This document shows, in pieces, positions 4,952 through 46,986 of a DNA stretch of 64,000 nt. This stretch comes from Octopus bimaculoides. Taxonomy: Eukaryota. The position numbers were made by a program, and so were the translations under genes. Every line of letters begins with the position of its first letter. Position 1 is the stretch's first letter. The DNA lies in contig NC_068997.1 of the NCBI RefSeq assembly GCF_001194135.2, forward strand, positions 12,423,923 to 12,487,922, given 5' to 3'. A model generated the notes under the pieces. It was not told the origin of the DNA. It did no database searches and worked only from the letters and a program-made list of their open reading frames with translations.

Positions 4952-5051
4952 ATGGCGGTGTTTCTCATTAATAACTGTCAATTTCAAGGATGCGGACTGC
5001 GATTTACGACATTAACAGAACTCATACAACATATAGAAGACACTCATTTAG
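4952..5051 (+). CDS. JAZF1: JAZF1 coding exon 1 (zinc finger 1)
   Basis: MAVFLINNCQFQGCGLRFTTLTELIQHIEDTHL(G), compare human FFSNTCRFGGCGLHFPTLADLIEHIEDNHI. Phase-1 donor G|GTAGGT. Confidence 0.93.
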
Positions 5052-7755: not shown

Positions 7756-8314
7756 CATAGGTCCCTATATAGATATATATACACACTCACACACACATAT
7801 GCACATTTATAAACATATATACAATACAATGCTTCACCAAAACCACTTTTTTATACATACACACACACACACACACACACACCAAGTGCGGCCCCAGGAA
7901 TTTTTTGAAGGGAAGGCACCAAGTCAGAAGGGAATGCAATTCTAGGAGAAAAGAGCATAATAACATTATTTAGAAGGGCGCACTTCTTTTCTTGGGCATG
8001 CGCTCCTTAGGCCCCCTCCTTGGGTCCGCCCCTGCACACACATGGAAGAAGCTGGAATATAAAAAGTGCCAGTTAGATATCTCAGCTGCATAGTTGGTTT
8101 AAACGTTGTCCCAAAAACCATTTCCTCAAAGTGTTCCATCTGTGTTGGCCATCACTGGGGAACAACAGCAACCCTTCTTCTTGTTGATGTAGGTCACACC
8201 CCTTTTGGAAGTATGTTCCATGACCTTTGGTAATTTGTTGTGCTTAGGAAGACTTGACAAGCCAAGTGAAATTGTAGTTTTTGGCCAGTGCCAATGACAC
8301 AAAACAGCTTCTGT

Positions 8315-8564
8315 GCCGGCGACGCGTAAAAGCACCCATGCCAGCGACGCGTAAAAATACCTGTGCCGTCGACACGTAAAAGCACAAATGCTGGTGATGC
8401 GTAAAAGCATTTGTGCCGGCGATGTATGAAAGCACCCATGCCGGTGACATGTAGAAGCACCCGTGCCGGTGATGCGTAAAAGCATTTGTGCCGGCGATGT
8501 GTGAAAGCACCCATGCCGGTGACATGTAGAAGCACCCGTGCCGGTGATGCGTAAAAACATCCGG
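8315..8564 (+). repeat. 25-bp VNTR, 10 units, with a 75-bp higher-order repeat
   Basis: Unit GCCGGYGAYRYGTAAAAGCAYYYRT begins every 25 nt from 8315; the A-B-C triplet repeats at 8390 and 8465. Confidence 0.92.
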
Positions 8565-8589
8565 CAGCTAACTCAGCAACAGAGTGATG

Positions 8590-8945
8590 CACTGCCTTTG
8601 TATGGTCTTCCAGAAATTCTCAAAGCCAGTCTCTCATTAACACCTTTCGTCAGTTGTCAATGTTCAGTGTATCATTCACTAAATAGGTTCTTTGCAGATG
8701 TTATCAACCCACTAATAGATAAATATCAGTCCTATCAAAATATTTCAACATGACTAATAGACATAATTAAATATAGTCTTATTCATTCCAGCGAGATAGT
8801 GAGTTTGGATGTGGTGAGCCTATTTACCAAGAATCTCACAGATGAGGCTCTATCGGTAGTTGGAGATATCATGAAATTGAATTCTTCAATTGGAGAATGT
8901 ACCAGTGATCCAAAAGATAGCTTGATGGAGATGTTAACATTCAGT
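8590..8945 (+). mobile_element. Penelope-like element reverse transcriptase relic
   Basis: One frame with one stop: LPLYGLPEILKASLSLTPFVS..LNRFFADVINPL..*..VSLDVVSLFTKNLTDEAL, matching PLE RT motifs LYGLPKIHK..LRPIVS and SxDVxSLFT..DEAL. Confidence 0.8.
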
Positions 8946-9644
8946 GCACAAGCAACATCATCATCATCACCGTTTAATGTCTGCTTTCATACTGGCATGA
9001 GTTAGACAGCGCTTGATGGGAACTGGTAAGCTGGAGAGTTGCACCAGGTTCCAATCTGAATTTGGCTTGGTTTCTACAGTTGGATGCCCTTCCTAACGCC
9101 AACCACTCTGAGAGTGTAGTGTATGCCTTTTACATGTCACCGACACGGGTGCTTTTACGCATCACTGGCATGGGTGCCTTCTTATCTTGCAGTAGCTACC
9201 ATCTCCTACTAAGCTTACCAGTTTTCCTTAGTATTCCAGTTTATCAGTACCAAATGCCATTTTTCTGCCTGCTGTAGTATCATTATACTGGTACCATTCT
9301 GCAAAGTTCTAATAACCATTCTTTTCCATCTTGTGATGATCAGTTCTGAAAGCCTTGCTTTTCTTCAGTGCTTCTCTCACTTTCCATCTGATCTCATCAG
9401 ACAGACCAGTAGTAAATAGACCTCTTCTAATACAGTTGTTGAAAGCATGGCTTGTGAATGGCTGTAGAAACCATGCTGAAGCAGATACTGGAGCACAAAA
9501 CAGTCCTTGGGTCACTCAGATACTGTCAGACCATCCCAGTCCATGTGAGCATGGAAAAAGCGGATGTTAAATGATGGTGGTGGTGATGATGATGATGATG
9601 ATATATAAATGTGTGTATATTGACATTGTTGTATAAATTTGATT

Positions 9645-12257: not shown

Positions 12258-12322
<65 letters not shown>

Positions 12323-14156
12323 TCATCATCATTTAACGTCTGCTTTCCATTCTGGCATGGGTTGGACATCATCATCATCATCATCATCGTTTAACGTCCG
12401 CTTTCCATTCTGGCATGGGTTAGACAGTATGACTGAAAACTGGTAAGCCAGGGAGCTGCACCATGTTCCGATCTGATTTGGCAAGGTTTCTGTGGCTGGA
12501 TACTCTTCCTAATGCCAACCACTCTGAGACTGTAGTGGATGTTTTTTACGTATGTAAATATACACACACACATACATGTATGTGTGTCTGTCTATCTATC
12601 TATCTGTCTATTTATATATAAAAAGCCACATCAGATGCCATGATGGAACTAAGGTGTAGGTACAGGAGGTGGTCAGATTCTTCATAAGGAATAGACAACT
12701 ACCATATATATAAATGCACACACACACCCACATACAGTTTCCATCTATATATATACATAACATTGTATGTATGTATGTCTATACCTATGCATATTTGTAT
12801 GTATGTATGTATATTTATGCATAAATATACATAACAACAGATGGTTTGAGGTTCACTACAGCTGTTTCAGACATGTTATCTTGTGCCTACAGTGGACCGT
12901 ACACATTGGTAGTGCACAAGTGCGCTATTCCCCACTCTACCTTGGTGCCTTTATTATTCAAATACCTTGATTCTCTCAGATCCTGAAAATTTTATGATAT
13001 AAGTATATATATTGGTGGCACGTAAAAAGCACCATTGGAGCATGGTCGATGCCAGTGCCGCCTGATTGGCTCCTGTGCTCGTGGCACGTAAAAAGCACCA
13101 TTCGAGCGTGGTTGATGCCAGTGCCACCTGACTGGCCCCCATGCTGTTAGCATGTAAAAAGTGCCCACTACACTCTTGGGGTGGTTGGCATTAGGAAGGG
13201 CATCCAGCTGTAGAAACCTTGCCAGATCAGATTGGAGCCTGGTGCAGCCTCCTGGCTTGCCAGTCCTCAGTTAAACTGTCCAACCCATGCCAGCATGGAA
13301 AGTGGGTGTTAAACGATGATGATGATGATGATGACGATGAGAAAAGGAGAGAGAGCGACAGAGGTGTTCTTTCATCAAAGTTTAAGCCCTCTCTTGTTCA
13401 CAATGCTGAAATGTTCCACAGTTTGAATTCTTTCACATTTTGCATCTATTTTCATCTTTCTCTGGCAAACTACTGAAATGAAATAGCGACTGGAAGGTAC
13501 TAAAGGGATGAGCAACAGGTTTTGAGCTCATACAACTTTTTAATATCAGTTCATTTTATCAGGCTTGAAACGTGTAGCCTCAATGGTAGCTATATTTTAC
13601 TGCATCTCTTGAATTATTAAGTTGTGGTGGTCATATAATACGCTATCTATGCAGTTGCTATTTATACTCTTATAACATTTATGAAACTGATAACTGTTGA
13701 AAATGGCCTTTGCTCCTCATCAGGCATCTCGTTTCTGAATGTCAGAGTGCCAAAAATGCCATTGAACTAACAACCCTTATTTCACAACTAAGGGCCATTT
13801 GGTGGCTGTTGGGGTTAGGGGTATTTTTTAGAGTGTTAATCTATTAAAGTGGTTATTTTTTTTTTATATTGTCTGTAAAGGAGGGCTATGTAGTTAACCT
13901 GATCTCAAGCCGAGTTTTGTGTCCAATGAAGGAGACGACGTTGACATGGGTGCCAGTCGTCTAATTTAGTTCGATTTCGATATACATATATATATATATA
14001 TTTAAAAAAATAACATCGACCACTAATGTGGACAATTAATGCGCTAGAAATAGATCACATCTTGTGTCTATTAAGACCTAAAAAGTTCTCAACATGAAAT
14101 ATAGCAGCATACCAAAAACGTGAGCGGGCAAGACATTTAAAATCACCTAAAAAAAT

Positions 14157-14235
14157 CATTATTAAACAGGAACCAGGTTTCGGATTTAACAAATTCTTAC
14201 CATTTGTCTATTCCTCATCAGCCTGATTTGTAATG
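14157..14235 (-). ncRNA. Candidate type I hammerhead ribozyme (Penelope-like minimal type)
   Basis: Minus strand reads CAUUACAAAUCAGG-CUGAUGA-GGA..GACAAAU-GGUAAGA-AUUUGUU..UCC-GAAA-CCUGGUU-CCUGUUUAAUAAUG. All core nucleotides are present and stems I, II and III can form. Confidence 0.7.
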
Positions 14236-15610
14236 TAACAGCAATTATCAGAATTGTATACATAGTTGCCCACCGCCATGGGTGCGCGTGCATATGGTTC
14301 TGCTAATTACAGCTTAATGGTAAAATTCAAAAGTCTTCGTTTTGGCTCGCTAATTTCAGGAATATATCCGCAGAAATATATATGTGCTTCTAAATTAAGT
14401 TAATTTTTTNNNNNNNNNNNNNNNNNNNNNNNNNNNNNNNNNNNNNNNNNNNNNNNNNNNNNNNNNNNNNNNNNNNNNNNNNNNNNNNNNNNNNNNNNNN
14501 NNNNNNNNNNNNNNNNNNNNNNNNNNNNNNNNNNNNNNNNNNNNNNNNNNNNNNNNNNNNNNNNNNNNNNNNNNNNNNNNNNNNNNNNNNNNNNNNNNNN
14601 NNNNNNNNNNNNNNNNNNNNNNNNNNNNNNNNNNNNNNNNNNNNNNNNNNNNNNNNNNNNNNNNNNNNNNNNNNNNNNNNNNNNNNNNNNNNNNNNNNNN
14701 NNNNNNNNNNNNNNNNNNNNNNNNNNNNNNNNNNNNNNNNNNNNNNNNNNNNNNNNNNNNNNNNNNNNNNNNNNNNNNNNNNNNNNNNNNNNNNNNNNNN
14801 NNNNNNNNNNNNNNNNNNNNNNNNNNNNNNNAAGTCAAATTTTAAGGTAAGTCTTGAATTGAATTCACACACTTACACACACACACACAGACACACACAC
14901 ACACCAAATTTACTTGTCTATAATTTGATGCTATTTTAACTGGAAAACTTATGGTGTGACTTACGCAGGGCAAAGCTAAAATTGTAAAGGGAAAATATTT
15001 TGTACCAAGATTTATCACTAAATTAGGGATGCACTTCATACATGAATAAATACAGTGTGTGTGTGTGTGTGTGTGTGAGGTGGGGCTGAAAAGTTCCTGG
15101 CTTTAATGGTATCTATGATAGCCTCAGGGCGACCAAAGCCTTGTGAGTGGATTTGGTAGATGGAAACTGAAAGAAGTCCTTGATACACATCATCATCATC
15201 ATCTTCAAATAACGTCTGTCTTCCGTGCTGGCATGGGTTGGACAGTTTCACAAGAGCTGGCCAGGTGGAAGACTACACCAGGCTACTGTGTCTGTTTTGG
15301 CATGATTTTTACAGTTGGATGCCCTTCCTAACACCAAACAACCTGTGTGTCCTTGTGTCTATGTTTGTCCCTGCATCACTGCTTGACATCTGTTGTTGGT
15401 GTGTTTACATCCTCTTAGTGGTTTGGCAAAAGAGTCCAACAGGATAAGTACTAGGCTTAAAAAAGAAAAATAGGTCCTGGGGTCGATTAGTTCAACTGAA
15501 AAACCTTTGAGGCAGTGCTCCAGCATGGCTGCAGTCATTTTGACTGAAACTAATAAAAGAATGAAAGAATATATATATTCTAATCCTTATTTTGTAACTT
15601 TTGTTTGCAG

Positions 15611-16376: not shown

Positions 16377-17554
16377 ACATATGCAATATTTTCCAGACAA
16401 AAATTTACAACCAAAACCGGTAGACCATCTTATACAGCAAGACAACTTCGGAGGACCAAAACTTCCATGTGAAACGCAGCAGGGTTTGGGAAAATAGTAA
16501 CAATGTTTGAATGTTTACACTATATAATACATCGACATGTATAATAGAAAAAATTTACATGATGCAAAGTCAGGGGACAAGTTTGAAGTGAAAGTAACAA
16601 GTTTAAACATTTCTCGGAGTGCAACTTGTATCCAACTTATTCCAGGTTGGTTTGATTAGAATAGAATCCAACATTCAGAATTGGAATAACTAGAATGGCA
16701 TATCCCTATTCATGAGAGTAATGGTGTGATTCTGTTTTCGTTTTGCAAGATTCCTGGTGTACAATTGTGTGTTGAAACAGTTAACAACATGATTGTAATA
16801 ATACCTCAGACTAAAAGACTGGAGTTTTAAGAATGCATTCTAATCTTTGTTCTAGAGTGAGAGATAGAATCTCAAACCCATGACTTGAGTTAGATACTTA
16901 GTATATTGTGAGTCAAGAAAGGTTTTATTAAAATTCCACCTTTAATCAAAATGCAAAAAAAAAAAAAATGCAAAACACCACATTGATGTATACTTGTTAA
17001 GGCAGGTAATCAAATATTCCCCACTCAAAACAAGGTAACTAGAATAGCAGCACTTTTTAAAAACTAAGTAAGTACAAACCATGGACAGATAAGATTTTTG
17101 TATTTGTTTTCCAACAGTCAGATTGAAACCTTGAGCAACAGATACAGCCAGAAATTTCCTAATGACTGGTATAAATGGACAATAGTCACAAGAGTGGGAA
17201 TGGTATTAAGACATCAGCTGGCACATATTTAAGAATGTAATTTGAGGTATACTTTCTGAACAGATAAAAAGAAAACAAAAAAAAAGACATGGTCAAACCT
17301 GACGTCTGCTCTGTCAAGAATGACTTGGAGCTTAACAACAACAACAACAGGCTTCACTCACAGCTATATTGAATTCACAGTCAGAATGACATCCAGCTAC
17401 AGAAACAATTTGCTCATGCAATTTGCCAGTATCAAAATTTCAATAACAAACAATAATGTATTCTGTTTTATGAGAAATGGATGTAAAATAAGTGAAACAT
17501 TTCTGTAACTTTAATCAAATTTTCAGAACTCTTGTTCTTTTTATTCTTTCACAG

Positions 17555-17653
17555 AAGTCAACCATTCCAAAACTGCTCTTGTGTTGAACGTTGAACAGTC
17601 TAGCATGCAGTCATCGCCAACTACTACTTATACGCGAAGTAACTCTACGACAG
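17555..17653 (+). CDS. JAZF1: JAZF1 coding exon 4 (S/T-rich linker)
   Basis: 99-nt phase 1/1 exon (E)VNHSKTALVLNVEQSSMQSSPTTTYTRSNSTT(G), compare human SFRSSTPTG. Acceptor TTTCACAG, donor G|GTTGGT. Confidence 0.8.
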
Positions 17654-18169
17654 GTTGGTAACAGGCCATGTTCTGTTTGTTTAATTTGCTACATAAAGTT
17701 TTTATATTCATATTTTTTTTTACTTTGCATGATCTTCAAACGTTGAGCCTCAAGTATGCAGTGGCCAGTGACTGAGACTTTTGCCGATATGCTGTGCTTG
17801 CGAAGACCTGTCAAGCCAAGTGACACTATAGTTGTGGCCAATGCCAGTGTCATGTGACAAACATCCATGCCAGTGGCACGTAAAAAGCACCCTTTGGACA
17901 TTGGGCCTCACGGAGACAATACTAAGTGACCGAGACCTTTGGCAATATGTTGTGCTTGAGAAGACTCATCCAGCCAAATGAAATCATAGTTGTAGTCAAT
18001 GTTGGTGTCACATAGCTGGCACCCATGCTGATGGTGTGTAAGAGGCACCCATTACACTCTCTGGAGTGGTTGGCATTAGGAAGGGCATCCAGCCATAGAA
18101 ACTATGCCAAATCAGATTGGAACCTGGTGCAACTCTCCAGTTTACCAATTTCAGTCAAACCATCTAACC

Positions 18170-18474: not shown

Positions 18475-19232
18475 GGCCAATCCATGCCAGCATGGAAAGC
18501 AGATACTAAATGATGATGATGATGATGATGATGATTCATGAGATACTGGAGCAAGAATCTTCTGCTACCATAGCATCATGGCCTCATGAGGGGAAACGGG
18601 GAGACAGGAACTCTGTGGAATCTTCTTAGTTGGTCTATATTCTAGTGCGTCTAAGAGCAGTAACTCAGCAGAATTCACCGTAATTAGGCTATAGTTCATT
18701 GAACAGTTGGCTCCATTGATTGAACTACTGGAGCACACGTCAAAAACTGATGTTTGATCCATCGTATTATTTTATTTATTTATTTATTTTACATGTTTCA
18801 GTCATTCGACTGTTGCCATGCTGGGGCACCACCTTGAAGTTGTTTGAAGTGAAACAAATTGATCTCAGTCGTGCATATTGTATTGGCCTTTTTTGATGAA
18901 CCAATAGCCTATGAGAACGTAAATAAACCAACACCGGTTGCTTTGTTGGGTGACAAACACACACATATATACAATGGGCTTCCACACAGTTTCCATCTAC
19001 CAAATTCTCTCACAAGGCATTGGTTGGCCCTGAGATATAATAGAAGACTTGCCCAAGGTGCTGTGCAGTGGTGTTGAACCAGAAACCATGTAGTTGCAAA
19101 GCAAAGTTCTGTACCTATCAGCCATGCCTATGCTTGTATTAACCTTCCTTTTATTGAAGTCAATATATTTTATTGAAGTTGTTGCTGTTGTTGTCGTTGT
19201 TATAGCACTGTTTTTGTTATGTTGTTTTTCAG

Positions 19233-19326
19233 GAAGTGAATTTGATGAAGAAGAAGTAAGTGAAAATGAAGACAGTGATGATTCTTGGACCAATCAGGAA
19301 GAGTTCTCGTCTGATCTAATTTTAAG
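19233..19326 (+). CDS. JAZF1: JAZF1 coding exon 5 (acidic region)
   Basis: (G)SEFDEEEVSENEDSDDSWTNQEEFSSDLIL(S), compare human GSEYDEEEVDYEESDSDESWTTESAISSEAILS. AG/GT boundaries. Confidence 0.93.
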
Positions 19327-20398
19327 GTTAGTTAAAATTCTGTTCTCTAACCCGATAGCATTGTAATTATCCTGTCAAATGTCATGTCTATTTAGTCACA
19401 TTGTTTCCAATTAATCACGCTTTATCTCATAGCTTTGAGATTTTTGAGGATGTAATTGTCTATTTTTAGATTGGCATTGTAGGATAAGTGTGGGAGGCTG
19501 GATACGACTTGACAGGGCCAAGAAAACTCAAAATCACGTGATCTAGTGGTCTTGGTGGTGGTGATTTATCTGCCCACTAGTGATGTAAACAAGAATGCAT
19601 TTTGCACCAAAAGCTAATAGGAGAGTATCTCTCGTGGTATTTATTGCAGTATAGTTTGTTCCAACAGAACATCCATGTTTAAGTGAGGATAAATATTACT
19701 TCTCGGTAGTAATACCGCCTCTGTCGCCAATAAATATACTTTAACAAGCACTCTGTAAAGTGGTTGGTGTTAAGAATGGTATCCAGTCATAGAAACCATT
19801 CCAAAGCAGGCGGAGGCTTGTGCAGTCTTTTGACTTGCCAACTCTTATTTCTTTGTTGCTCATAACGGGCTAAACATAGAGGGGACAAATAAGGACAGAC
19901 AAAGGGATTAAGTCGATTACATCAACCCCTGTGCGTAACTGGTACTTAATTTATTGACCCTGAAACGATGAAAGGCAAAGTCGACCGCGGTGGAATTTGA
20001 ACTCAGAACATAATGGCAGATGAAATACCGCTAAGCATTTCGCCTGGCATGCTAACGTTTCTGCCAGCCCACCGCCTTCTTGTCAACTCTTGTCAAACCA
20101 ACCCAAGGGGGATGGACTTTAGCTCTTTAACATTCAGATTAGTTTGTTAAAATATAATGCTTATTTATTCACATTGTTTTGAAATTCATCATAGACTGTC
20201 TTGCAGCTTTTAAGATTTTGATGATGTGTTTGTTTACTGGTCAGTTTCAACAGAAAACAAGTAGAATATCTGGGCCAGATATGGTCAGTTTGAATGCTAA
20301 AGGGTTAAACAAGAACGAGGCAATACAGGTTGTTTAAATCCATACCAGTGTATTTTACTGGTTGATCTTTTTTTTGGTTTTTTTTTTTTCCTTCACAG

Positions 20399-20527
20399 CA
20401 TGAAGAACATGAAAGAAGTGGATGGAGATAAACCATTTAGATGTCCTGTACCAGGTTGTAAAAAACGGTATAAGAATATCAATGGAATCAAGTATCATGC
20501 ACGACATGGTCACCGCAAGGACGCACG
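20399..20527 (+). CDS. JAZF1: JAZF1 coding exon 6 (zinc finger 2)
   Basis: MKNMKEVDGDKPFRCPVPGCKKRYKNINGIKYHARHGHRKDA(R), near-identical to human KPFACPVPGCKKRYKNVNGIKYHAKNGHR. Phase 2/2. Confidence 0.96.
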
Positions 20528-21244
20528 GTATGGAACAAACGAACAAACTAGCTTTTCATTCTTTACAACAGATTTTGCTTGTGGCTTGATTTTTGTTTCC
20601 TTATTTCACTCGCTGTGTATAAAGTTAAAATATAAAAATGTTGCATAATAAAAAAAAAGGTTTGGCCTCATGGAAGCGACAACAAGTGACTGAGATCTTT
20701 GGCGATATGCTATGATTGAAGAAGCCTCATCAGGCCAAGCGAAACCGTAGCCATGGTCATTGCCAGTATCCTGTAAATGGCACCCGTGAAATTGTAATTT
20801 TGGCTGTTGCCGGTGTCATGTAAATGGCACCCATGCTGGTGGCACGTAAAATGCCCCCATTACACTCTAGGAGTGGTTGGTGTTAGGAAGGGCATCCAGC
20901 TGTAGAAACCATGCCAAACCAAACTGGAACCTGGTGCAGCTTTCCGGCTTACCACTTCCAGACTGGATGCTCTTCCTAACTCCAACCCTTCCAAGAGCAT
21001 AATGGGTGTTAGTTATGTGACACTGGCATTGGCCACAACTATGGTTTCACTTGGCTTGACTGGCCTTTTTAAGCATGGTATATCGCCAAAGGTCTTGATC
21101 ACTTATTATTGCATCTGTGAGGCCTAAAGTTCGAAGGGTGCTTTTAATGTGCCACTGGCACAGGTACCAGTTATGTGACACTGGCATGTCTTGTATGTAT
21201 GTCTGCATGTCTGTCTATCTGTATGTGTCTGCATGTCTGTCTGT

Positions 21245-21550: not shown

Positions 21551-22573
21551 TTAGTTAAGTTGTGTGTGTGTGTGTGTATTTGCAGCATAATCAAATGGTT
21601 AAGGGGTTTGCTCTGATGCCACAACATGATATTTCGTACAAGTGTCTTTTGTCATGATGTTGGATCGACCCAACCTTTGTGAATGAAAAATAAGTTGATG
21701 GATATTGTGCAGAAGCCTGTTGGATGGATTGTATTTCAAAGATCTGACCTTGTCACCCACTATTCTACTCATTCAGCCTGAGAATTGTGTTAAGGTTACG
21801 TGTGTCTGTGGAATATTCAACCATTTATGTACAAATTCAAAGCACAGCGAGTGCAATGGTTTGATGAACAACTGAATGCTAATTATTGAAACCAACAGAG
21901 ATCAATCTGCATGTGTGTGTGTGTGTGTGTGTACAGTTATGTATGTACATGTGTATATGTATGTATGTTTGAATACAAATTTATATTTATGGATGTATAT
22001 GTATGTATATCTGTGTGTATATGTATGTATATTTTTGTATGAATGTTTATGTATGTATGGATGGACGTATATGCATACGCATTTGTGTATGAATGTGTAT
22101 GTGTGAATCATCATCATCATTTAACATCCGCTTTCCATGCTAGCATGGGTTCGACGATTTGACTGGGGACTGGCGAAGCAGATGGCTACACCAGACTCCA
22201 ATCTGATCTGGCAAAGTTTCTACAGCTGGATGCCTTTCCTAACGCCAACCACTCCGAGAGTGTAGTGAGTGCTTTTTATGTGCCACCGGCACGAGAGCCA
22301 GTCCGGCGTTACTGGCAACGGCCACTCTCAAATGGTGTTTTTTATGTGCCACCTGCACAGGAGTCAGCCAATATTTTGTTCACATGCCATCGGCACAAGT
22401 GGCAGTTAGGCGAAGCTGATATGTCTGTCTCTACCTGTCTATTTATCTATCTTTATCTCTCTACCTATCTTTATCTTTCTACCTATATATGTATATATGT
22501 ATGTACATATGTATATTAGCTGTAGCCAATAAAAATGAAAAGCATGTTGATGCATATTTTTTGGCATTTTCAG

Positions 22574-23084
22574 AGTAAGGAAAGGTTACCGGTGTCATTG
22601 TGGAAAAAGCTACAAAACTCCTCAAGGTTTACGCAGTCACAACATTAACCACCATCCTGCGTTTGACATTCTCTCTTTATCACAACAGAACTGCACACCA
22701 CAACAAGTGCAATCCTTACAACTGCCAACACAACAACAACCACCACAACAACAACCACAACAGCAGCAGCAGCAGCCACCAGTGCGACCAACACATTTGA
22801 CGGTGTCGCCAGCCAAGCCCTCTGCTGCGCAACTGACTTGCACAACTTCGACGGCTGCCGTCAGTACGCCTTCGATTACGCCAACAAATCTCACATCAGT
22901 TAGCCCGTCATTAGCTGCTGCCCTTTCGCAGACAATGCTAACACCATCCCAGCTGATGGCTCAGCTGCCGTCCGGCATTCCCTCAATGTCAGTTCCGTCA
23001 GCTAATTCTGCTCCGTCTGTTGGTCATGTTCAGTTGATTAGCCAACCGGCTGCGCTCGTCACTACTGCAGCATATGAGAAGTGA
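22574..23084 (+). CDS. JAZF1: JAZF1 last coding exon (zinc finger 3 plus Q/P/S/T-rich tail)
   Basis: (R)VRKGYRCHCGKSYKTPQGLRSHNINHH, compare human VRKPFKCRCGKSYKTAQGLRHHTINFH. Open frame continues to TGA at 23082-23084. Confidence 0.92.
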
Positions 23085-29201: not shown

Positions 29202-32200
29202 AACATCTATAATACATCTATTATCAAATGATGAATAGGCACATTTTCCATGATTCCCATTTCTTATGTTGGGAGAACATCTGCTGACAAGTCGCAGAAA
29301 GAGATTGGGAGTCTTTGAGTATGCTGATGTTAGTGGAAGTGGAAGTGGAAAATAGAGGATAGTGATGATGATGATGATGATGTTGTTTAGCCCTGGGTAA
29401 ATCATGAAACAGTAGATGAACCGATGGTCAAAGGTATTCCAGTCTTGACCATTCCGCTTTGATATATTCAAGATTGTGGAGTTGCACTGGTGATCGTAAG
29501 ATTGTGGTTTCGATTCCTAAACTGGGTGATGGCATTGTGTCCTTGAGCAAAACACTTCATTTCACATTGCTCCAGTTCACTCAGCTAGCCAAGTGAATAA
29601 TCCTGTGATGGATTAGCAACCTGTCCAGTGGGGGAATATGTATGTCATAGTCAGGGAAACTTGCTTTATGAGCCTTTGGCTTAGGAGGGACCTTTGATCC
29701 TTTTTTTTTTTTTATATTGAGGACAACTTTTATATAATGTACCCCCCTTTTTTTAAAGATGACATTTAAAAAAAAAAAAAAGACTTTTGGAGGAGGTGCC
29801 TTCCCAGGCCTTCCAAGACTTGGGTGAATGATATGTTAATGTTCTGTTCAAACTGTTGCATGATGTCACTTGCTGGAGAGACATTTTGCAGGGAGAGAAT
29901 TGCCAAAGAAAGATTGGGGATAGGAGTTAGTACAGGGCTAAGGATATGTTGGGTATGGCATAAGGTTATAAGAGGAGAAGTGATGAAGATGAATGAAGTG
30001 GAAGTTGTACCGCAATACCAGCTATGTCTGAAGAACAAAAGACATTATATATAATAGTGGTAGAAAAGGCAGAGAGAGAGAGAGGAGACTGTATTTCTGG
30101 AGTGTCAGAGGCTGAAATATGTCTGAGTGGTTTCATGCCAATCAGTTGAGTGACTTTGTTCTGAGGCAAATTTGATGATGATGATGATGATAAGGATAAA
30201 GAACTTGGGGATAATATAATGAAGTTATTGTACAGTTCATATCGTGTGTCTATAGCTGGCGCTTTGATTTTTCTGTTTTTTTCTTTTTCTTTCTTTTTTT
30301 TGTTGTTGCAATTTTTATATTTTAAATCTGTGATGGGTAAATGAGCAGTTTCAGATGTTGTTTAGCCTGCAGATCATCCTCAATTGAACAGACCACTAAT
30401 AAAAAGCATTCCAGCCATGACCATCTGTCTTAATATCCAATACAGGATAATGTAGTTCTAANNNNNNNNNNNNNNNNNTTTGGCTGCTATTTCTAGCTGA
30501 TGAAGCTACCACTTGGAGGTTCCCTCATTTTGGTATTTTGCTTCCTGGAGTTAAATCTCAATAGGAGAGATGTATGTGTAGGGGTGGGTCACCCTTTTTT
30601 TTTTCCTTTTTGTTCTGTCCAACCCATGGACAATGGACAAATGATGAAGAATATGATGTTTCTCAGAAATTGAAGTGTGTTAAAGTACCAGTTATACACT
30701 GCACGAAAATATCGAATCAAGTATCCTGCCTTCAATGCCTTTCTTTCTTTCTTTCTCTTTTTTTTTTTTTTTTTTTTTACAAATTTAACCCTCCCCCAAC
30801 AACCCCCCATCTAATACAATGAAATTCTTATATTTTTCACTTTGCAAAACAACAATAACCAAGGTTCGATATGGAACCATTTTCTTGGAGGTTGACCGGC
30901 TAGATGTTCATATTCTACTCCATGCATTGTATTAAATTTTGTGCCTGAGAATCAGACACTCAAATCTTTACATGCTTAATGAGTTCACACTTCATTTTCA
31001 CTGAGGTCAGCTTTGCCTTCCATCCTTTCTGGATCGATGAAATAAGCACCAGTCTGTCACTGAGGTCGATACAATCGACTTCCGAAATTTTCTGGCCTTG
31101 TACCGAAATTTGAAACCATTATATCAGTTTGCAAGTAGAACCATTAGCACACCAGACAGAAAATGCTTAACGGCATTCATTCTGGGCTTTTATATTCTGA
31201 GAACAATTTCCACCAAAGTCGACTTAGCTTTTCTATGCTTTCGGTGTTGATAAAATAAATACATACCAGTCGAGTACTGGAATCGATGTAATTAGCTAAC
31301 CCCCGCCCACCACCCCTCACCATCCCTATCCCCGAAATTTCAGGCCTTGTGATTGTGTTTGGAAGAATTTTTTTTTTTTAAATTAGTACACCTAGTAGTT
31401 TTTATTTCTTTCTTGCCCTCCTATTATCACCGGCCCCTCCTCAAACAGGGGGGGGGGGGGGGGGAGAAAGAAAATACAAAAATACAAAATACATTTCAAA
31501 TGTCCTCCCATCACATGCTTTTTTTTTTTTTTTTTTTTTTTCCAATCCAACCTGTATTTCTGCTTTGTTTCTGTATTTGGTTTGCAAGATTCTTGATGTG
31601 AAACAAATCTTGTTGTGTCTTGTTGGGAAGATCGTAGCGCCACTGTTGTTAATAATAACAGACAATTGACTGACAAAAACGAAGTGATATTGAACCAGTG
31701 CATGTGTTATTATTAGTGTGATGACCTTCCCAAGACACAACAAGATGTATTTGTACTTCTTTCATCCTATGTCTTTCATCTGTCTCATCTTTGTATTTGC
31801 CTTTCACTTCTGTTTTTGCATCCCACCCCTATCCTCTACCTCCTTCCGCTCTTTGTACCTTCTACCTCTCCTTCTTGTCTTTTGCCTTTATGTCTTTCTT
31901 CTCACTGCTTCTTCCTGTCTCTTACCCACTGTATGACATCTACTTCCTGTGTCCTGCATTTACAACCATGTCCTACCTCTCTCCTTTGCATCCAGTCTCC
32001 TGTCACCAAATTTCCCCCCTCCCCTCCTCTCTCTTTCTCCCCGTTCCTCCATCTATTTCTTTCACTCCTGCTTCTGTTCTCTGTCTCCCACTACTACTGT
32101 TGTCTTCCACTCCTGTTCCCCCCCCCCCGTGACTTTTGATTCCCATCTCCTTCCTCTGTCTCTTTCCTCCTCCTCAATTAATATTCTAAGGTTGTACACA

Positions 32201-40567: not shown

Positions 40568-41370
40568 TTTTAGTTTCAGTCATTTGACTCTGGCCATGCT
40601 GGGGCACTACCGTTAGTCGAACAAATCGATCCCATGACTTAACTTATTCTTTGTAAGCCTAGTACTTATTCTATCAGTCTCTTTTGCTGAACTACTTAAG
40701 TTACGGGGATGTAAACACACCAACATCGGTTGTCAAACGATGGTGGGGTGACAAACACAGACAAACAAATATATATATATATGTATATATATAGGCGTAG
40801 GTGTGGCTGTGTGGTAAGCAGCTTGCTTACCAACCACATGGTTCTGGGTTCAGTCTCACTGCGTGGCACCTTGGGCAAGTGTCTTCTACTATAGCCTTGG
40901 GCCGACCAAAGCCTTGTGAGTGGATTTGGTAGACGGAAACTGAAAGAAGCCCGTCGTATATATATGTATATATATATATGTGTGTGTGTGTGTGTATATG
41001 TTTGTGTGTCTGTGTTTGTCCCCCCCAACATCGCTTGACAACCGATGCTGGTGTGTTTACGTCCCCGTAACTTAGCGGTTCGGCAAAAAGAGACCGATAG
41101 TATAAGTACTAGGCTTCCAAAGAATAAGTCCTGGGGTCGATTTGCTCGACTATAAAGGCGGTGCTCCAGCATGGCTGCAGTCAAATGACTGAAACAAGTA
41201 AAAGAGTATATACGATGGGCTTCTTTCAGTTTCTATCTACCAAATCCACTCACAAGGCTTTGGTTGGCCCGAGGTTATAGTAGAAGACACTTGCCCAAGG
41301 TGCCATGCAGTGGGACTGAACCTGGAACCACGTGGTTGGTAAGCAAGCTACTTACCACAGCCTCTCCTAT
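40568..41370. mobile_element. CORE-like tRNA SINE (family B): full sense copy 40793-41208 nested in an antisense copy
   Basis: Antisense 3' half at 40568-40790 and antisense 5' half at 41209-41370 flank a complete sense copy. Core GTGGCACCTTGGGCAAGTGTCTT; internal (TA)n(TG)n. Confidence 0.88.
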
Positions 41371-42330: not shown

Positions 42331-44470
42331 CAGTTCAAATCTTACCAAGATTAACTTTGCCATTCATTCCTCTGTGGTTGAGAGAATAAATATCTCTCAT
42401 ATACTGAGCTTGATCCAGATGACTATAGCCCATCCCTACATCTAACTACATGACCTGAGACAAGCTTAGAAATCATCACAGTCATCATCATCATCATTGC
42501 TATCATCATGATTATCATCTTTACCATTATCAATATTTATTGAACTATTCCTGGTGAAACTGTTAAAAAAATAATATCAATTTCTAAATATCAAGAATTC
42601 CATAAAATCAATTGATAAACGTTAACCTGTTTTTAATTAACATCTTTTTCTGAAGTTTTTATATCATTTATCCATTTTATATACATATATATATATATAT
42701 ATATATAATTTGATGCTTTTTAAACGTGCATGCATTTTTATGTATTGTATGGATGAGTGGAATTTATGTATATATATGTATACACACACACACACACGTG
42801 TGTTTGTGTCAGTATGTGTGTATATATATATATGTGTGTGTGTGTTGTCTAATGAATGCAGGAGTTAGATGTGAGCTACTTCAAGTTTCATGCTTGGTCA
42901 GATAATGCAGTAATTGGATATGCTTGTACATAGTACAGTACGCAAGCCTGTCTGATTACCACACTATCTCACCAATCATGAAACCTGAAGTAGCTCATGT
43001 ATAACTATTGCATTCATTAAATGATATCTATTTCTTGTTGAAATGAGTGCTTTTTTGCTGATCCAAAATATGGACATAACAGCTAATGATTTTGAGGATA
43101 GATTTAAGCAATATACATCCTCCATCAGATGTAGAGACAGAGAAAACTCCATTTTCTTGACTGGACACTCCAGAACCAAGGAAATGACTTCCTCATGTTA
43201 CATGGAATGAACTTGAATGCATTCTTTGACTACCGGGGTCAATGCAATTGACCAGGCTCCAGAAAGGATTATTATTTGAAACCATTATCATTATTATTAT
43301 TATTATCAGCAGTTGCATCAAAGAAAAAAAACCATCAACTGGCAGAATTGTTAACATGTCAAACAAAATGCCTCATATTATTTGTTCCAAATCTAATTCT
43401 GTGTTCAAATCTTGCTGAGATCAGCTTTACTTTTCATCCCTCTAGGGCCGATAAAATAAAGTACCAGTTATTTACTGGAGTCAATATAATTGATAATCCC
43501 CTTCCCCTAAATCCCAGGCTTTCTGCCTGAGTTAGAAATTATTGTTAAGCTGTAAATTAGCAGAGTCAGTAGAGCGTAGAGAAAATGTCTTGTGGCAGTT
43601 GTTTCAGCTCTTTACATTCTGAGTTCAAATCATACCGGAGTTTAGCTTTGCTTTTCCTCCACCTAGTTTCAATGAATTAAATCAGTGGTTCCCAAAGTGG
43701 GCAGTATTGCACCCTTTGGGGCAGTGGAAAGTTTCATAGGGGCTAAACAAATCGATTACATCGACTCCAGTGTGTAACTGGTACTTAATTTATTGACCCC
43801 AAAAGGATGAAAGGCAGAGTCGACATTAGCAGAATTTGAACTCAGAACGTAACGGTAGACGAAATACCGCTAAGCATTTCACCTGGCTTTATACCGTTTC
43901 TGCCAGCTTGCTGCTTTGGCATGGTTTCTATGGCTGGATATCTTTCCTAATGAAAACTACAATAGTTGTGTATCATTTACTTTGAAAGACATAATGACAG
44001 ATTAATTCGACATAAATCTTGTAATTATCAGGATATGTGAAGTATGGATCAACATGTCCCATGCAAGTTGTCAGTAGAACAATTTGATTCCGTTTACTAT
44101 TCCTGTTATTAAAAACCACACAAACATAAACAAACCAAAGAAGGAGTCTCCATGAGGTCACTTCATGTGCTAGACATTACAGCTTAATCTCCCTTGAATC
44201 ACACTCTACTGCATTAAAAAAGAACTGACAGAGACTACGTTTATATAGATACAAAAAAGGACAGAATGGTCAAGGATGGAATGCCCTTGTTGTTATTTAG
44301 ACCTAGGTTGTCTCTGCTTCATCAGAGCAGATGTAAGTCTAGAAAACAGCAACAACAACACTCACAAAGACACAGAACACAAACAGAAAAGCAAGCAAGA
44401 CAGAGATGGATTAACTGAATTTAATAGCAATGAAGTACATAATATATGCTGTCTAGGCCCCATCACAGCA

Positions 44471-44921
44471 TCACTTTGATTTTGATGATGCGCTGGAGCT
44501 GTCCTTTTTGTCAGAGTCCTTTTTCTCTTTGTCGTTGTCCTTCTCATCCTTTTTCTCTTTCTTCTCTTTGTCTTTCTCCTTGCCTTCGCTCTTCTCAGCA
44601 TCACGGTTCTGGATTTTGTTGTTGATGAGATTGTGCAGTGCAATGATGCTGCGTATTAGAGCAGCGACATACACGACCAGGTATTGGTCGTTAGTTTTAA
44701 CGTACATTGCCTTCACAAATTCAAGCAGGTTGACGTCAGGCAGCAGGTTAAAGACATCCTGGAGGTGGTATATGATCTGATGGTTAACTGGTAGTTGTCC
44801 GGAGGCCACCTTCTGCAGGTACCGACTCACGTCCTCTATGTGGTTGTGCAGACCTTTAAGACCTGTTAACTGGTTTGTTATTCTTTGTGACAGAGTACCT
44901 ACAGTTGTATCTTTGATATCC
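44471..44921 (-). CDS. PSMD7: 26S proteasome lid subunit Rpn8 (PSMD7), last coding exon
   Basis: (R)[63 protein letters not shown]...[11 protein letters not shown], then the KEKE-like tail and stop. Acceptor ATAACAG. Confidence 0.97.
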
Positions 44922-46986
44922 CTGTTATGTGAAATAAAAAAAAAATATCAGTGATATATATAAAAAAAAGCTATACACACACACACACATATATATATCT
45001 TATCTTTTACTTGTTTCAATTATTAGACTGCAACCATACTGGGGCAACTCCTTGAAGAATTTTAGTTGAATGAATTGACCTCACTACTTTTATCTAGAGC
45101 ATGGTAGTTATTCTATCAATCTCTTTTGCTGAACCACTAAGTTACAGGGATGTAAACACACCAGCACCAGTTGTCAAGTGGTGGCAGGGGAACAAACACA
45201 GACACAAACACACATATCTACCAAATCCACTCACAAGGCTTTAATTAGCCCGAGACTATAGTAGAAGACACTTGTCCAAGGTGCCATGAAGTGGGACTGT
45301 ACCCAGAACCATGTAGTTGGAAGCAAGCTTCTTACCACACAACCCCAATAAAACTGCAAAGCATTCGAAGGGGTGCAAATCATCCTATTATTATTATTAT
45401 TTGTTTAACATCTGTTTTTCTATGCAAGTGGGAGTTAAATACAGACATGAAGCAGGATTTTATGGCTGGATTCTCATCTTGTCACCAACCATCACTTGTT
45501 ATTTTTCAAGAAAGAAATTTCTTTCCACACCAGAAGTCTTCAAAAGCACAAAATAACTGGTCATAATGTCAACAAGGAATGCCAACACCACCAATTTCGT
45601 TGAAGGAGTGATAAGCATAGAATATCACCCCCATTGCAATATCAACACTCATGCCAACAGACACACACAAGTGCCAATGCACGAAGCGCTCGGACCTTTA
45701 CTCACTCTGTTACTTCTGCTAAATATTAATAAAAATATACATTTACTAACAATTAAAGTTAATTGCCCCATCAAAGTGGTTGTTCCGTGTTACTACTAGT
45801 TTAACCCCAAGCAGATCTCTCGCCCGCTGGTAATCGGTGTGATGCTGCACCCTGTATCATCATCGTTTAACGTCCGCTTTCCATGCTAGCATGGGTTGGA
45901 TGATTTGACTGAGAACTGGTGAACCAGGTGGCTACACCAGGCTCCAATCTGATTTGGCAGAGTTTCTACAAAATATATATGCAATATATATTGCTAGCAG
46001 GGGGAGCGAACCCCTACCATCCTCTAGCAGAACAACAAGATCGTGAAACTCAAACACTTTAGGCAATAAGTGCTGAAAAATACCAACAGTCTTTTCAAGT
46101 TACCTCTAGTGGAATTGATAAATGTGGTTTTGATTACTTGGTTATCATCATCTCCATGAACTGCAAGAGAGATAACGCTGAAACGAATTTGGAAACTGTA
46201 TTTTCTATAGCAACCCTCACTCGCTTCAAAGTGATGTAGTATTTCTCCATGTCTTTGCAACGGTGAACAGTTCAAAGGCTGGACATGTTTTTGTAGAAGA
46301 TTGCATGAACGGTGACTTTGTTTTTAGTTAGCACACAAATGTAGATACAGTCCTAACACATAGATATGTCAGTGCTATGTAAACATACCAGTGCTGGTAA
46401 CATGTTAAAAAGGCACCCAGCATTTTCGGTGTTGGAAAGGGCATCAAGTTGTAGAGACCATGCCAAAACAGACAAGTGGAGTCTAGCCAGCTCCTGTCAA
46501 AATTGTTCAACCCATGCCACCTGGTAAACGGATGTTAAATGATGATGATGATGATATGTGGATGGGTGTCTGATGGCTCTCTTGCAGCTTCCATCCGCCC
46601 AATTCCCTCACAAACCACTGCTCAGCCTGCGACTATAGTAGAAAATATTAGACAAGTGCATGTGGTTCTAAAACAGCTCCTAATCTAGTCATATCTGCAC
46701 ACACAAAAAACACACACCATATATAGGTATGTTTTTATAACATATATGTGTGGGTGTGCACACTGGCATGAACTGGTGGTAAACAGTGTATTAAATGAAA
46801 ATTCTCTGTTGTATATAGCCATGTTTCAGTGAGCTGTCTTTGCTTGTAGCTGACCTTGTCTTTCCTACCTTTTCACGCCAAGATCAATGAAACAAGCACT
46901 AGACCAAGCAAACAGTTGATATAATCAACTATATAATAACTTGTAAGTGGTGCACCAGCTTGGCCACAGTGCCACGACTGCAATCA

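What the first reader, a model, noticed from the sequence alone, without database searches (positions are those of the whole stretch)
14157..14235. Intact-core type I hammerhead ribozyme, antisense in a JAZF1 intron, with Penelope-type minimal stem III
Seen on the minus strand: C3-A9 CUGAUGA (14221-14215); stem II closed by G10.1-C11.1 (GGA/UCC, then GACAAAU/AUUUGUU with a GGUAAGA loop); G12-A15.1 GAAA (14181-14178); stem III A-U and C-G with a 3-nt loop (ACCUGGU); cleavage triplet GUU with predicted cut between 14171 and 14170; stem I CAGG/CCUG, bulge, AAA/UUU, CAUUA/UAAUG. Established: Penelope-like elements (PLEs) carry minimal type I hammerheads whose very short, palindromic stem III is completed by dimerisation, and ACCUGGU is self-complementary apart from a central U-U. 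Inference: this is a PLE terminal-repeat or retrozyme-like relic that may still self-cleave. It is antisense to JAZF1, so it would cut only an antisense transcript, not the JAZF1 pre-mRNA. Two PLE RT relics and three decayed look-alikes in the window fit a PLE-hammerhead family in this genome.
Basis: partly seen in the sequence, partly recalled or inferred. Interest (0 to 1): 0.85.

Follow-up and report, generated by a model that had tools for sequence, protein, structure and literature searches.

The report
Lone hammerhead-like motif in octopus intron
A complete hammerhead-ribozyme consensus really sits on the antisense strand of intron 1 of the Octopus bimaculoides JAZF1-like gene, but it is a single, unconserved, atypical copy, so it is most likely a stranded relic of a ribozyme-carrying mobile element (or a lucky chance match) rather than a working, host-relevant ribozyme.

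Summary
On the minus strand at 14235-14157, every conserved hammerhead position and the type I helix layout are present at the stated coordinates. The window is Octopus bimaculoides, and the motif lies antisense in intron 1 of a JAZF1-like gene.

A Markov null makes such a motif improbable in one window: 4e-3 for a minimal descriptor, down to about 2e-6 with all observed features. That still allows roughly 0.1 to 160 chance copies per 2.7 Gb genome.

Independent support is weak.
- No Rfam hit reaches threshold. The best is HH9 at 12.8 bits against a gathering score of 52.
- No second copy exists in the window or in two orthologous loci.
- The hammerhead fold (-8.0 kcal/mol) loses to a competing fold (-14.7 kcal/mol).
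- Stem III is unstable, and there is no partner copy for dimerisation.
- The 467-bp host segment (13909-14375) is absent from O. vulgaris and O. sinensis, where unrelated DNA fills the same slot.

Penelope-like elements are present. I found RT relics at about 8.1-9.0 kb and two Penelope-type minimal hammerhead-like motifs at about 59.4 and 60.9 kb. Their build differs from the candidate's.

Best reading (about 0.45): an orphan relic of a retrozyme-like, hammerhead-bearing element. Chance is about 0.35. Interest is low to moderate.

The parts
14157..14235 (-). Whole type I hammerhead-like motif (79 nt)
   Evidence: Read directly. It is the only hit of the bulge-free descriptor scans. Rfam HH9 aligns end to end at 12.8 bits.
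14222..14235 (-). Helix I 5' strand: CAUUA-C-AAA-U-CAGG
   Evidence: Pairing to 14170-14157 has only about 10% ensemble probability, because AAUCAGG prefers CCUGGUU.
14215..14221 (-). Core C3-A9, CUGAUGA
14182..14214 (-). Helix II: GGA/UCC (G10.1-C11.1), two A-A mismatches around one U-A pair, a 7-bp distal stem and a 7-nt loop
   Evidence: Pair probabilities are 0.91-1.00. Only 17% of null hits have a helix II this stable.
14178..14181 (-). Core G12 A13 A14 A15.1, GAAA
14171..14178 (-). Helix III A-U and C-G around a CUG loop, then U17. The predicted cleavage is 3' of 14171 (GUU triplet).
   Evidence: The hairpin alone is +3.7 kcal/mol with pair probability about 0. Two copies could form a -8.7 kcal/mol duplex with a central U-U.
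14157..14170 (-). Helix I 3' strand: CCUG-UUU-AA-UAAUG
13909..14375 (-). 467-bp, 36% G+C segment found only in O. bimaculoides, which carries the motif. O. vulgaris and O. sinensis have an unrelated ~454 bp between the same ~90%-identical flanks.
   Evidence: The minus-strand RNA folds better than shuffles (z = -2.6, 3 of 300 shuffles as good), while the plus strand does not (z = -0.8).
13980..14001 (.). (AT)11 microsatellite inside the segment. TA repeats also sit at the 14369-14381 junction, and at the same junction in O. vulgaris.
13909..13936 (-). 28 nt matching the 5' end of a SINE-like repeat (second copy at 48425-48452 +), at the edge of the lineage-specific segment
4952..5050 (+). JAZF1-like exon 1 (upstream end of the host intron)
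14832..14846 (+). Visible tail of JAZF1-like exon 2. The rest lies in the N gap 14410-14831.
8523..9002 (+). Penelope-like element RT relic (context; about 5 kb from the motif), shared with O. vulgaris and O. sinensis. A weak inverted fragment lies at 8056-8139 (-).

Best explanation
The motif is a solitary, evolutionarily young relic of a hammerhead-bearing non-autonomous retroelement. Such elements are retrozyme-like and of the kind thought to be mobilised by Penelope-like elements. This one landed in, or was copied into, a (TA)n-flanked spot of JAZF1 intron 1 in the O. bimaculoides lineage.

Shown: the full type I hammerhead consensus lies inside a 467-bp, AT-rich, lineage-specific segment whose hammerhead-strand RNA is unusually foldable.

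Inferred mechanism: in the parent element, transcripts of tandem copies would pair their near-palindromic ACCUGGU stretches into an extended helix III (a double hammerhead). They would then cut 3' of the GUU triplet and release unit-length RNA that can be circularised and reverse-transcribed.

Inferred present state: this copy is alone, so it has no partner for dimerisation. Its monomer stem III is unstable, and its helix I strand is sequestered by an alternative pairing. It is therefore probably inactive or very weakly active. Being antisense, it cannot cut the JAZF1 pre-mRNA.
For: - All conserved positions, G10.1-C11.1 and the three helices are present at the stated coordinates.
- The null expectation per window is 4e-3 down to about 2e-6, depending on how many observed features are required.
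- The HH9 model aligns end to end with the same helices.
- The host segment is absent from the orthologous intron of two congeners, as expected for a recent insertion.
- The segment has 36% G+C, within the low G+C (<50%; <45% in the paper's figure legend) reported for animal retrozymes, but at 467 bp it is slightly above the 150-450 bp repeat size reported there (PMC7229834). It abuts TA repeats, and PLEs insert preferentially in microsatellites (PMC8557442).
- The RNA fold is strand-asymmetric and favours the hammerhead strand: z = -2.6 against -0.8, with ordinary control windows between -2.3 and +0.9.
- PLEs and PLE-type hammerhead-like motifs exist in the same window, so hammerhead-carrying retroelements have been active in this genome.
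- Short, near-palindromic helix III and a non-optimal hammerhead fold are normal for dimer-acting animal hammerheads (PMC4209133, PMC7229834).
Against: - No Rfam hammerhead hit appears at gathering threshold, or at E<=10 in 600 nt. The HH9 score of 12.8 bits against 52 equals E of about 0.14 per family per window.
- No homologous copy, tandem array or second hammerhead of this type was found in the window, the two orthologous loci, a 5.8-billion-protein six-frame search or the metagenome scans.
- Several features are atypical: a GUU triplet, helix II with only 3 bp before the mismatches, helix I with only 4 bp before a bulge, no recognisable loop-loop contacts, and a central U-U in the 'palindrome'.
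- No target-site duplication was seen.
- O. vulgaris carries a different segment of similar length at the same place. That is not what a simple insertion predicts.
- The structure z-score is modest and was computed post hoc.
Confidence: 0.45

Rival explanations
1. It is a chance occurrence. AT-rich intronic DNA happens to spell the 13 or so fixed hammerhead positions with pairable flanks. There is no ribozyme ancestry and no activity.
For: - The minimal-descriptor null gives 4e-3 per window. That is about 160 chance motifs per 2.7 Gb genome, and still 0.1-2 with all features required. Any large scan will therefore meet some.
- The CM score is far below threshold.
- No relatives and no conservation were found.
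- The hammerhead fold is 6.7 kcal/mol worse than the MFE, and helix III is never populated.
- The 79-nt fold z-score is only -1.24.
- Hammerhead surveys discard hits that cannot be grouped into a family (PMC4209133).
Against: - The joint probability of the full core, G10.1-C11.1 and helices this stable is about 2e-6 per window.
- The motif sits in a lineage-specific segment whose hammerhead strand folds unusually well.
- The window shows other signs of hammerhead-bearing retroelements.
Confidence: 0.35
2. The motif is a Penelope-like-element terminal-repeat (pLTR) hammerhead of the minimal Penelope type, left behind by a decayed PLE.
For: - Canonical EN+ PLE relics are in the window.
- Canonical PLEs carry hammerheads in their pLTRs (PMC4209133, PMC8557442).
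- The candidate has a near-palindromic 15.x-16.x region and G10.1-C11.1.
- TA repeats lie at the junction.
Against: - PLE hammerheads seen here (L006 11829, L008 153, and window 59388-59348 and 60946-60909) all have an extra nucleotide after A9, a compact 5-7 bp helix II and no helix III hairpin. The candidate has none of these.
- No PLE coding relic lies within 5 kb. The nearest one is ancient and shared with congeners, whereas the host segment is specific to O. bimaculoides.
- There is no sequence similarity to the PLE loci fetched.
Confidence: 0.1
3. It is an active ribozyme used by the host. It would process an antisense transcript of the JAZF1 locus, in the way HH9 and HH10 are thought to act in amniote genes.
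For: The core is intact, helix II is well formed, and the motif lies roughly 0.5 kb upstream of exon 2.
Against: - It is not conserved even within the genus Octopus.
- It is antisense to the only gene present.
- Stem III is unstable and a competing fold dominates.
- GUU is a rare cleavage triplet in natural hammerheads (my own knowledge of the NUH rule literature).
- No evidence of antisense transcription is available.
Confidence: 0.05
4. It is a box C/D snoRNA, reading UGAUGA as the C box.
For: Weak Rfam snoRNA matches overlap the area: SNORD48 at 17.8 bits, and SNORD82 and sR7 at 12-16 bits.
Against: - All scores are far below gathering.
- No CUGA D box occurs in the 130 nt downstream on that strand.
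- The strand is antisense to the host gene, whereas intronic snoRNAs are sense.
Confidence: 0.01

Closest known systems
Canonical metazoan type I hammerheads of satellite or non-LTR retrozyme repeats (newt satellite 2, Schistosoma, Mytilus, axolotl; PMC7229834, PMC4209133)
   Same: - Type I topology, full core and G10.1-C11.1.
- Very short helix III (2 bp, 3-nt loop) that is nearly self-complementary and could be completed by dimerisation.
- Host DNA is AT-rich (36% G+C), though at 467 bp it is slightly above the 150-450 bp repeat size reported for these elements.
- The hammerhead fold is not the most stable fold.
   Different: - Not in a tandem repeat, and no second copy nearby.
- Helix I has 4 bp and helix II has 3 bp before irregularities, instead of about 6 and 4.
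- Helix II carries a long extension, with 33 nt between A9 and G12.
- No recognisable loop 1-loop 2 contact nucleotides.
- GUU instead of GUC.
- A central U-U in the palindrome.
- Fails the Rfam thresholds.
Minimal hammerheads of Penelope-like elements (Cervera & de la Pena 2014, PMC4209133)
   Same: - The core and G10.1-C11.1.
- Reliance on an intermolecular or dimeric helix III.
- PLE relics and PLE-type motifs are present in the same window.
   Different: - PLE min-HHRs have a nucleotide between A9 and G10.1, a compact helix II of about 6 bp and no helix III hairpin.
- They lie in pLTRs next to the RT/GIY-YIG ORF.
- The candidate meets none of these.
Rfam Hammerhead_HH9 (RF02275), the conserved intronic hammerhead of amniotes
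   Same: It is the best-scoring Rfam model and aligns over all 77 model positions with the same helices. It shares the CUGAUGAG...CGAAACC..GGU string.
   Different: - The score is 12.8 bits against a gathering score of 52.
- There are 29 rather than 10 unshown residues in helix II.
- Loop 3 is 4 nt shorter.
- U17 replaces C17.
- The motif is antisense, not sense, to the host gene.
- It is not conserved between congeners.
Double-hammerhead (dimer-only) self-cleavage of newt and viroid RNAs (Forster et al. 1988, cited in PMC4209133)
   Same: A weak monomer helix III. Two copies could form a 7-position ACCUGGU/ACCUGGU duplex of -8.7 kcal/mol.
   Different: That mechanism needs two copies on one multimeric transcript. 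Here only one copy exists within at least 64 kb.

Membership tests
Hammerhead ribozyme, type I | Conserved core: C3 U4 G5 A6 N7 G8 A9, G12 A13 A14, A15.1-U16.1, H17 not G | tested here: met
   CUGAUGA, GAAA, U16.1 and U17 were read at 14221-14171.
Hammerhead ribozyme, type I | Three helices around the core, with helix I open and helices II and III closed by loops | tested here: inconclusive
   The pairings can be drawn. In the ensemble, helix II is 0.91-1.0, helix I about 0.1 and helix III about 0. The hammerhead fold is -8.0 against an MFE of -14.7 kcal/mol.
Hammerhead ribozyme, type I | Match to a curated covariance model at its gathering score (Rfam clan CL00010) | tested here: not met
   No hit at gathering and none at E<=10 in 601 nt. 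HH9 scores 12.8 bits against 52 in a 101-nt scan.
Hammerhead ribozyme, type I | Site-specific Mg2+-dependent self-cleavage 3' of position 17 | not testable with these tools
   This needs in vitro transcription of the monomer and a tandem dimer, with G5 or G12 mutant controls.
Hammerhead ribozyme, type I | Loop 1/loop 2 tertiary contacts of natural fast-cleaving hammerheads | tested here: inconclusive
   Helices I and II carry bulges and internal loops 4 and 3 bp from the core. They do not have the canonical 6 bp/4 bp geometry described in PMC4209133. Contacts cannot be predicted here.
Penelope-like element minimal hammerhead | Located in a pLTR flanking a PLE RT/GIY-YIG ORF | tested here: not met
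   The nearest PLE relic is at 8056-9002, about 5 kb away, and is shared with congeners, while the host segment is not.
Penelope-like element minimal hammerhead | Extra nucleotide between A9 and G10.1, compact helix II of about 6 bp, no helix III hairpin | tested here: not met
   The candidate has CUGAUGA followed directly by GGA, then 3 bp, mismatches and 7 bp, and a 2-bp/3-nt hairpin. PLE examples L006 11829 and L008 153 show the family build.
Penelope-like element minimal hammerhead | Palindromic 15.x-16.x region; G10.1-C11.1 | tested here: met
   ACCUGGU is self-complementary except for the central U, and the G-C pair closes helix II.
Penelope-like element minimal hammerhead | Second motif in tandem or within 50 kb, allowing dimers | tested here: not met
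   No second motif of this sequence type is in the window. The two min-HHR-like motifs at about 59.4 and 60.9 kb are about 45 kb away and have different stem III sequences.
Metazoan non-LTR retrozyme | Short tandem repeats of 150-450 bp, each with a type I hammerhead | tested here: not met
   Tandem Repeats Finder reports only (AT)11 in 13500-14409. The self-BLAST shows no repeat. A solo monomer remains possible.
Metazoan non-LTR retrozyme | Low G+C (<45-50%) unit of a few hundred nt | tested here: met
   The segment is 467 bp with 36% G+C (composition; boundaries).
Metazoan non-LTR retrozyme | Multi-copy family in the genome; expressed as linear and circular RNA | not testable with these tools
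   No octopus genome or transcriptome could be searched at the DNA level. The indirect searches were empty.
Conserved intronic hammerheads (HH9/HH10 type) | Sequence conservation of the motif across species at the orthologous intron | tested here: not met
   The orthologous slot in O. vulgaris and O. sinensis holds unrelated sequence, while the flanks are about 90% identical.
Box C/D snoRNA | C box plus a downstream CUGA D box with a terminal stem, sense in the host intron | tested here: not met
   There is no CUGA downstream and the strand is antisense. Rfam snoRNA scores are 12-18 bits against gathering scores of 36-55.

The most novel reading that the evidence does not exclude
The 467-bp segment is a recent solo insertion of an undescribed cephalopod family of retrozyme-like elements. 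Its type I hammerhead would have an unusually long, mismatched helix II and a GUU site, and would still cleave as a dimer or co-transcriptionally and yield circular RNAs. I found no paper describing hammerheads or retrozymes in cephalopods.
Probability: 0.15. Interest if true: 0.45.

Novelty: new member of a known kind. Interest (0 to 1): 0.25.

Why it matters
If genuine, it would be a first pointer to hammerhead-bearing retroelements of the satellite or retrozyme type in cephalopods. It would also be an example of a very young solo insertion, which helps date and trace the mobilisation of such elements.

It would not bear on JAZF1 expression, because the motif is antisense and is not conserved. 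Type I hammerheads are already known in thousands to hundreds of thousands of copies in many animal genomes, so one more unverified copy changes little.

The practical lesson concerns scans. A perfect hammerhead core in a 64-kb window is statistically striking locally. Genome-wide it is expected at a rate of units to hundreds, so family membership or a cleavage assay is needed before calling it a ribozyme.

Tried and rejected
- **Rfam scans.** I ran gathering on the whole window and E<=10 on 601 nt. Neither gave a hammerhead. Only a 101-nt scan surfaced HH9, at 12.8 bits.
- **Repeat searches.** Self-BLAST and repeat searches for copies of 13500-14394 in the window found only microsatellite hits and one 34-bp SINE-like match.
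- **Orthologous loci.** BLAST of the O. bimaculoides and O. vulgaris slot sequences against all loci, both strands, word size 7, showed no homology and no inversion.
- **Six-frame protein search.** I searched the six-frame translation of the segment against 5.8 billion proteins, hoping to catch Logan contigs. There were no hits.
- **PLE relic word search.** A word-indexed search with the PLE relic found nothing. The exhaustive HMMER search then worked.
- **Metagenome scans.** Two exact-pattern scans were run. One was empty and the other gave two chance 20-mer hits in a GC-rich, probably bacterial, metagenome contig.
- **Rfam on orthologous and PLE loci.** No hammerhead was found, which shows that Rfam models miss PLE minimal hammerheads.
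- **snoRNA reading.** Rejected, because there is no D box.
- **tRNA/SINE and tandem-array readings of the segment.** Rejected.
- **Other RT-like ORFs.** The ORFs at 49698-50138 and 59555-60091 gave no Pfam match, and the PLE protein queries found no significant similarity in those regions, so they are not counted as PLE relics.
- **Source organisms of the PLE relatives.** No names are on record, so octopus PLE terminal repeats could not be fetched for direct comparison.

Full report
**What the window is.** The window is 35% G+C with twelve N gaps. It is 100% identical to Octopus bimaculoides chromosome record CM046617.1 (locus L003). A JAZF1-like gene lies on the + strand and is 96% identical at protein level to the O. 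vulgaris protein. Its exons are at 4952-5050, about 15.6 kb, 17554-17655, 19229-19324, 20397-20528 and 22572-23081. Exon 2 is mostly inside the assembly gap 14410-14831, and only its last 15 nt (14832-14846) are visible.

**Observation check.** On the minus strand, 14235-14157 reads CAUUACAAAUCAGG-CUGAUGA-GGAAUAGACAAAUGGUAAGAAUUUGUUAAAUCC-GAAA-CCUGG-U-U-CCUGUUUAAUAAUG.
- the C3-A9 core at 14221-14215;
- the G10.1-C11.1 pair;
- the 7-bp distal stem with a GGUAAGA loop;
- GAAA at 14181-14178;
- a 2-bp helix III with a 3-nt loop;
- U17 at 14171;
- helix I as CAGG/CCUG, AAA/UUU and CAUUA/UAAUG.

Among 8 CTGATGA and 28 CTGANGA sites on both strands, it is the only one that passes even a very relaxed type I descriptor without a bulge after A9.

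**Is it more than chance?** I sampled millions of sequence contexts around a fixed CTGATGA from an order-3 Markov model of the window. The expected number of motifs per 64-kb window is as follows:
- 0.08 for a relaxed descriptor;
- 0.004 for helix I >=4 bp, helix II >=3 bp and helix III >=2 bp;
- 1.4e-4 if G10.1-C11.1 is also required.

Among null hits, 17% have a helix II as stable as observed, 7% a helix I as stable, and 1.4% both. This takes the joint expectation to about 5e-5, or about 2e-6 with the G-C pair. The motif is therefore very unlikely in this particular window. A 2.7 Gb genome (size from my own knowledge) holds about 42,000 such windows, so chance alone predicts between about 0.1 and 160 such motifs genome-wide. 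The thresholds were set after seeing the data, and real DNA is richer in hairpins than a Markov chain. The statistics favour a real origin but do not settle it.

**Covariance models.** Rfam finds nothing at gathering thresholds in the window. It finds no hammerhead at E<=10 in 13900-14500. Only when 101 nt are searched does Hammerhead_HH9 appear, aligned over all 77 model positions with the same helices. The score is 12.8 bits against a gathering score of 52, with E = 0.94. Rescaled to one family and the whole window, that is E of about 0.14. The penalties come from 29 instead of 10 residues inside helix II, a loop 3 that is 4 nt shorter, and U17.

**Thermodynamics.** The drawn hammerhead structure is worth -8.0 kcal/mol. 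The MFE is -14.7 kcal/mol. Helix II is solid, with pair probabilities of 0.91-1.0. Helix I has about 0.1 and helix III about 0, because AAUCAGG pairs with CCUGGUU, which covers positions 15.2 to 17, at about 0.89 probability. The stem III hairpin alone costs +3.7 kcal/mol. Two copies could form an ACCUGGU/ACCUGGU duplex of -8.7 kcal/mol with a central U-U. This is the pattern of dimer-acting animal and viroid hammerheads (PMC4209133, PMC7229834). It also means that a lone copy should be a poor ribozyme.

**Comparative evidence.** I fetched the orthologous loci of O. vulgaris (L001) and O. sinensis (L002). Most of the intron aligns at 82-92% identity. Window 13909-14375 has no counterpart. Between the same sharply bounded, ~90%-identical flanks, the other two species carry about 454 bp of unrelated sequence. 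There is no inversion and no copy elsewhere in any locus. The motif is therefore not a conserved intronic ribozyme. Its host segment is lineage-specific, and TA repeats sit at one junction in both lineages and inside the segment. I saw no target-site duplication, and with only two lineages I could not polarise the change.

**Search for relatives.** Every search I could run came back empty:
- no copy in the window;
- no tandem array;
- no protein-level echo of the segment in 5.8 billion predicted proteins;
- nothing meaningful in the metagenome scans.

A DNA search of the octopus genome, which would be the decisive test, is not possible with these tools.

**Penelope-like element (PLE) context.** The frame 8523-9002 (+) is a decayed reverse transcriptase. 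An exhaustive HMMER search gives 479 hits. [quoted passage not shown] A weak inverted fragment lies at 8056-8139 (-). Both are shared with O. vulgaris and O. sinensis, so they are old.

Two loci carrying related PLE ORFs have hammerheads just outside the ORF (L006 at 11829, L008 at 153). Their build matches that described by Cervera & de la Pena: CUGANGA, one extra nucleotide, a 6-7 bp helix II, GAAA, two nucleotides, then U-H, with no helix III hairpin. Rfam does not detect these.

The same descriptor finds two such motifs in the window, at 59388-59348 and 60946-60909 on the minus strand. The null expectation for that quality is 0.004 per window. Hammerhead-bearing PLE-type sequences therefore very probably exist in this genome, which raises the prior for the candidate. 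The candidate itself does not have that build. It has no extra nucleotide, a 3 bp + mismatches + 7 bp helix II, and a helix III hairpin. It resembles more the 'canonical' animal type I hammerhead of satellite or retrozyme repeats, though with non-standard helix lengths and GUU.

**The segment as an RNA.** The 467-nt minus-strand transcript folds to -113.3 kcal/mol, with z = -2.6 and 3 of 300 dinucleotide shuffles as good. The plus strand gives -96.9 kcal/mol and z = -0.8. In 14 control windows, ordinary sequence ranged from -2.3 to +0.9, and only microsatellite or inverted-repeat windows were lower. This strand-specific excess of structure, built on G-U pairs, is what a structured retrozyme-like RNA would leave. 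It is modest, and I looked for it after the fact.

**Interpretation.** I put about 0.45 on a genuine but orphaned hammerhead from a retrozyme-like, probably PLE-mobilised, element that is now functionally inert.
- Shown: the motif, its context, its lack of conservation, its weak model score and its unfavourable monomer fold.
- Inferred: the mobile-element origin and the dimer mechanism.

**Comparison and novelty.** It works like, or once worked like, the dimer-dependent type I hammerheads of animal satellite and retrozyme repeats. It cannot be filed in that family, because the tandem-repeat and multi-copy criteria are unmet or untestable. It fails the defining build of PLE minimal hammerheads. 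If real, it is a new member of a known kind. The literature I searched holds no description of cephalopod hammerheads, which gives it minor novelty. Interest is 0.25.

Noticed in passing
window 59348-59388 (-) and 60909-60946 (-): Two Penelope-type minimal hammerhead-like motifs: GUUA-CUGAAGA-G-AUUGCA/AGAG/UGCAAU-GAAA-UAA-UU-UAAC, and GAU-CUGAAGA-A-GGAAU/UUUUAU/AUUCC-GAAA-UA-UU-AUU. They have the same build as the hammerheads beside PLE ORFs in L006 and L008. The chance expectation for this quality is 0.004 per window. They are not homologous to each other, and no PLE coding relic lies nearby.
   Followed up: partly
window 8126-8245 and 8793-8930 (+); gap 14410-14831: The NCBI gene model XP_014776259.1 for the O. 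bimaculoides JAZF1-like gene uses the Penelope-like RT relic as its N-terminal exons (sequence EIVSLDVVSLFTKNL...). It skips the true exon 1 (4952-5050) and exon 2 (ETDVKTLEKQEMHPPASVPLSQILR in O. vulgaris), apparently because exon 2 lies in the assembly gap.
   Followed up: yes
window 8523-9002 (+), 8056-8139 (-), 9168-9401 (-): A cluster of head-to-head Penelope-like element fragments, conserved in O. vulgaris and O. sinensis. The homologues have RVT_1 plus a C-terminal GIY-YIG motif.
   Followed up: yes
window 13909-14375 versus L001 30999-31452 and L002 about 31569-32033: There is a sharp replacement of about 460 bp by unrelated sequence of similar length, between ~90%-identical flanks and next to a TA microsatellite. 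The mechanism is unresolved. It could be independent insertions into the microsatellite or a templated repair.
   Followed up: partly
window 12296-13009 versus L001 20520-30117: O. vulgaris and O. sinensis carry about 9.6 kb of extra microsatellite- and SINE-rich DNA in the same intron, which is absent from O. bimaculoides.
   Followed up: no
window 44474-44947 (-): An exon of a PSMD7/Rpn8-like proteasome subunit (Pfam MitMem_reg PF13012, E = 3e-33).
   Followed up: partly
window 60314-61400 and 48425-48780; also near many N gaps: Several copies of ~220-bp SINE-like repeats (GGTCGATAAAATAAGTACCAGT...). A second repeat rich in GGCAC.../TGGCACATAAAA units flanks many assembly gaps.
   Followed up: no
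L006 11660-11860 (+): In an unidentified eukaryotic contig, a tRNA-like stretch (GGTGGTCTAGTGGATAGCG...GGTTCGAATCC) sits between the stop codon of a PLE ORF and its 3' minimal hammerhead.
   Followed up: no
window 40823-41290 and 42732-43200: These windows have extreme predicted fold stability on both strands (z between -12 and -16). They overlap TA- and CA-type microsatellites, and long microsatellite or inverted-repeat structures are the likely cause.
   Followed up: no
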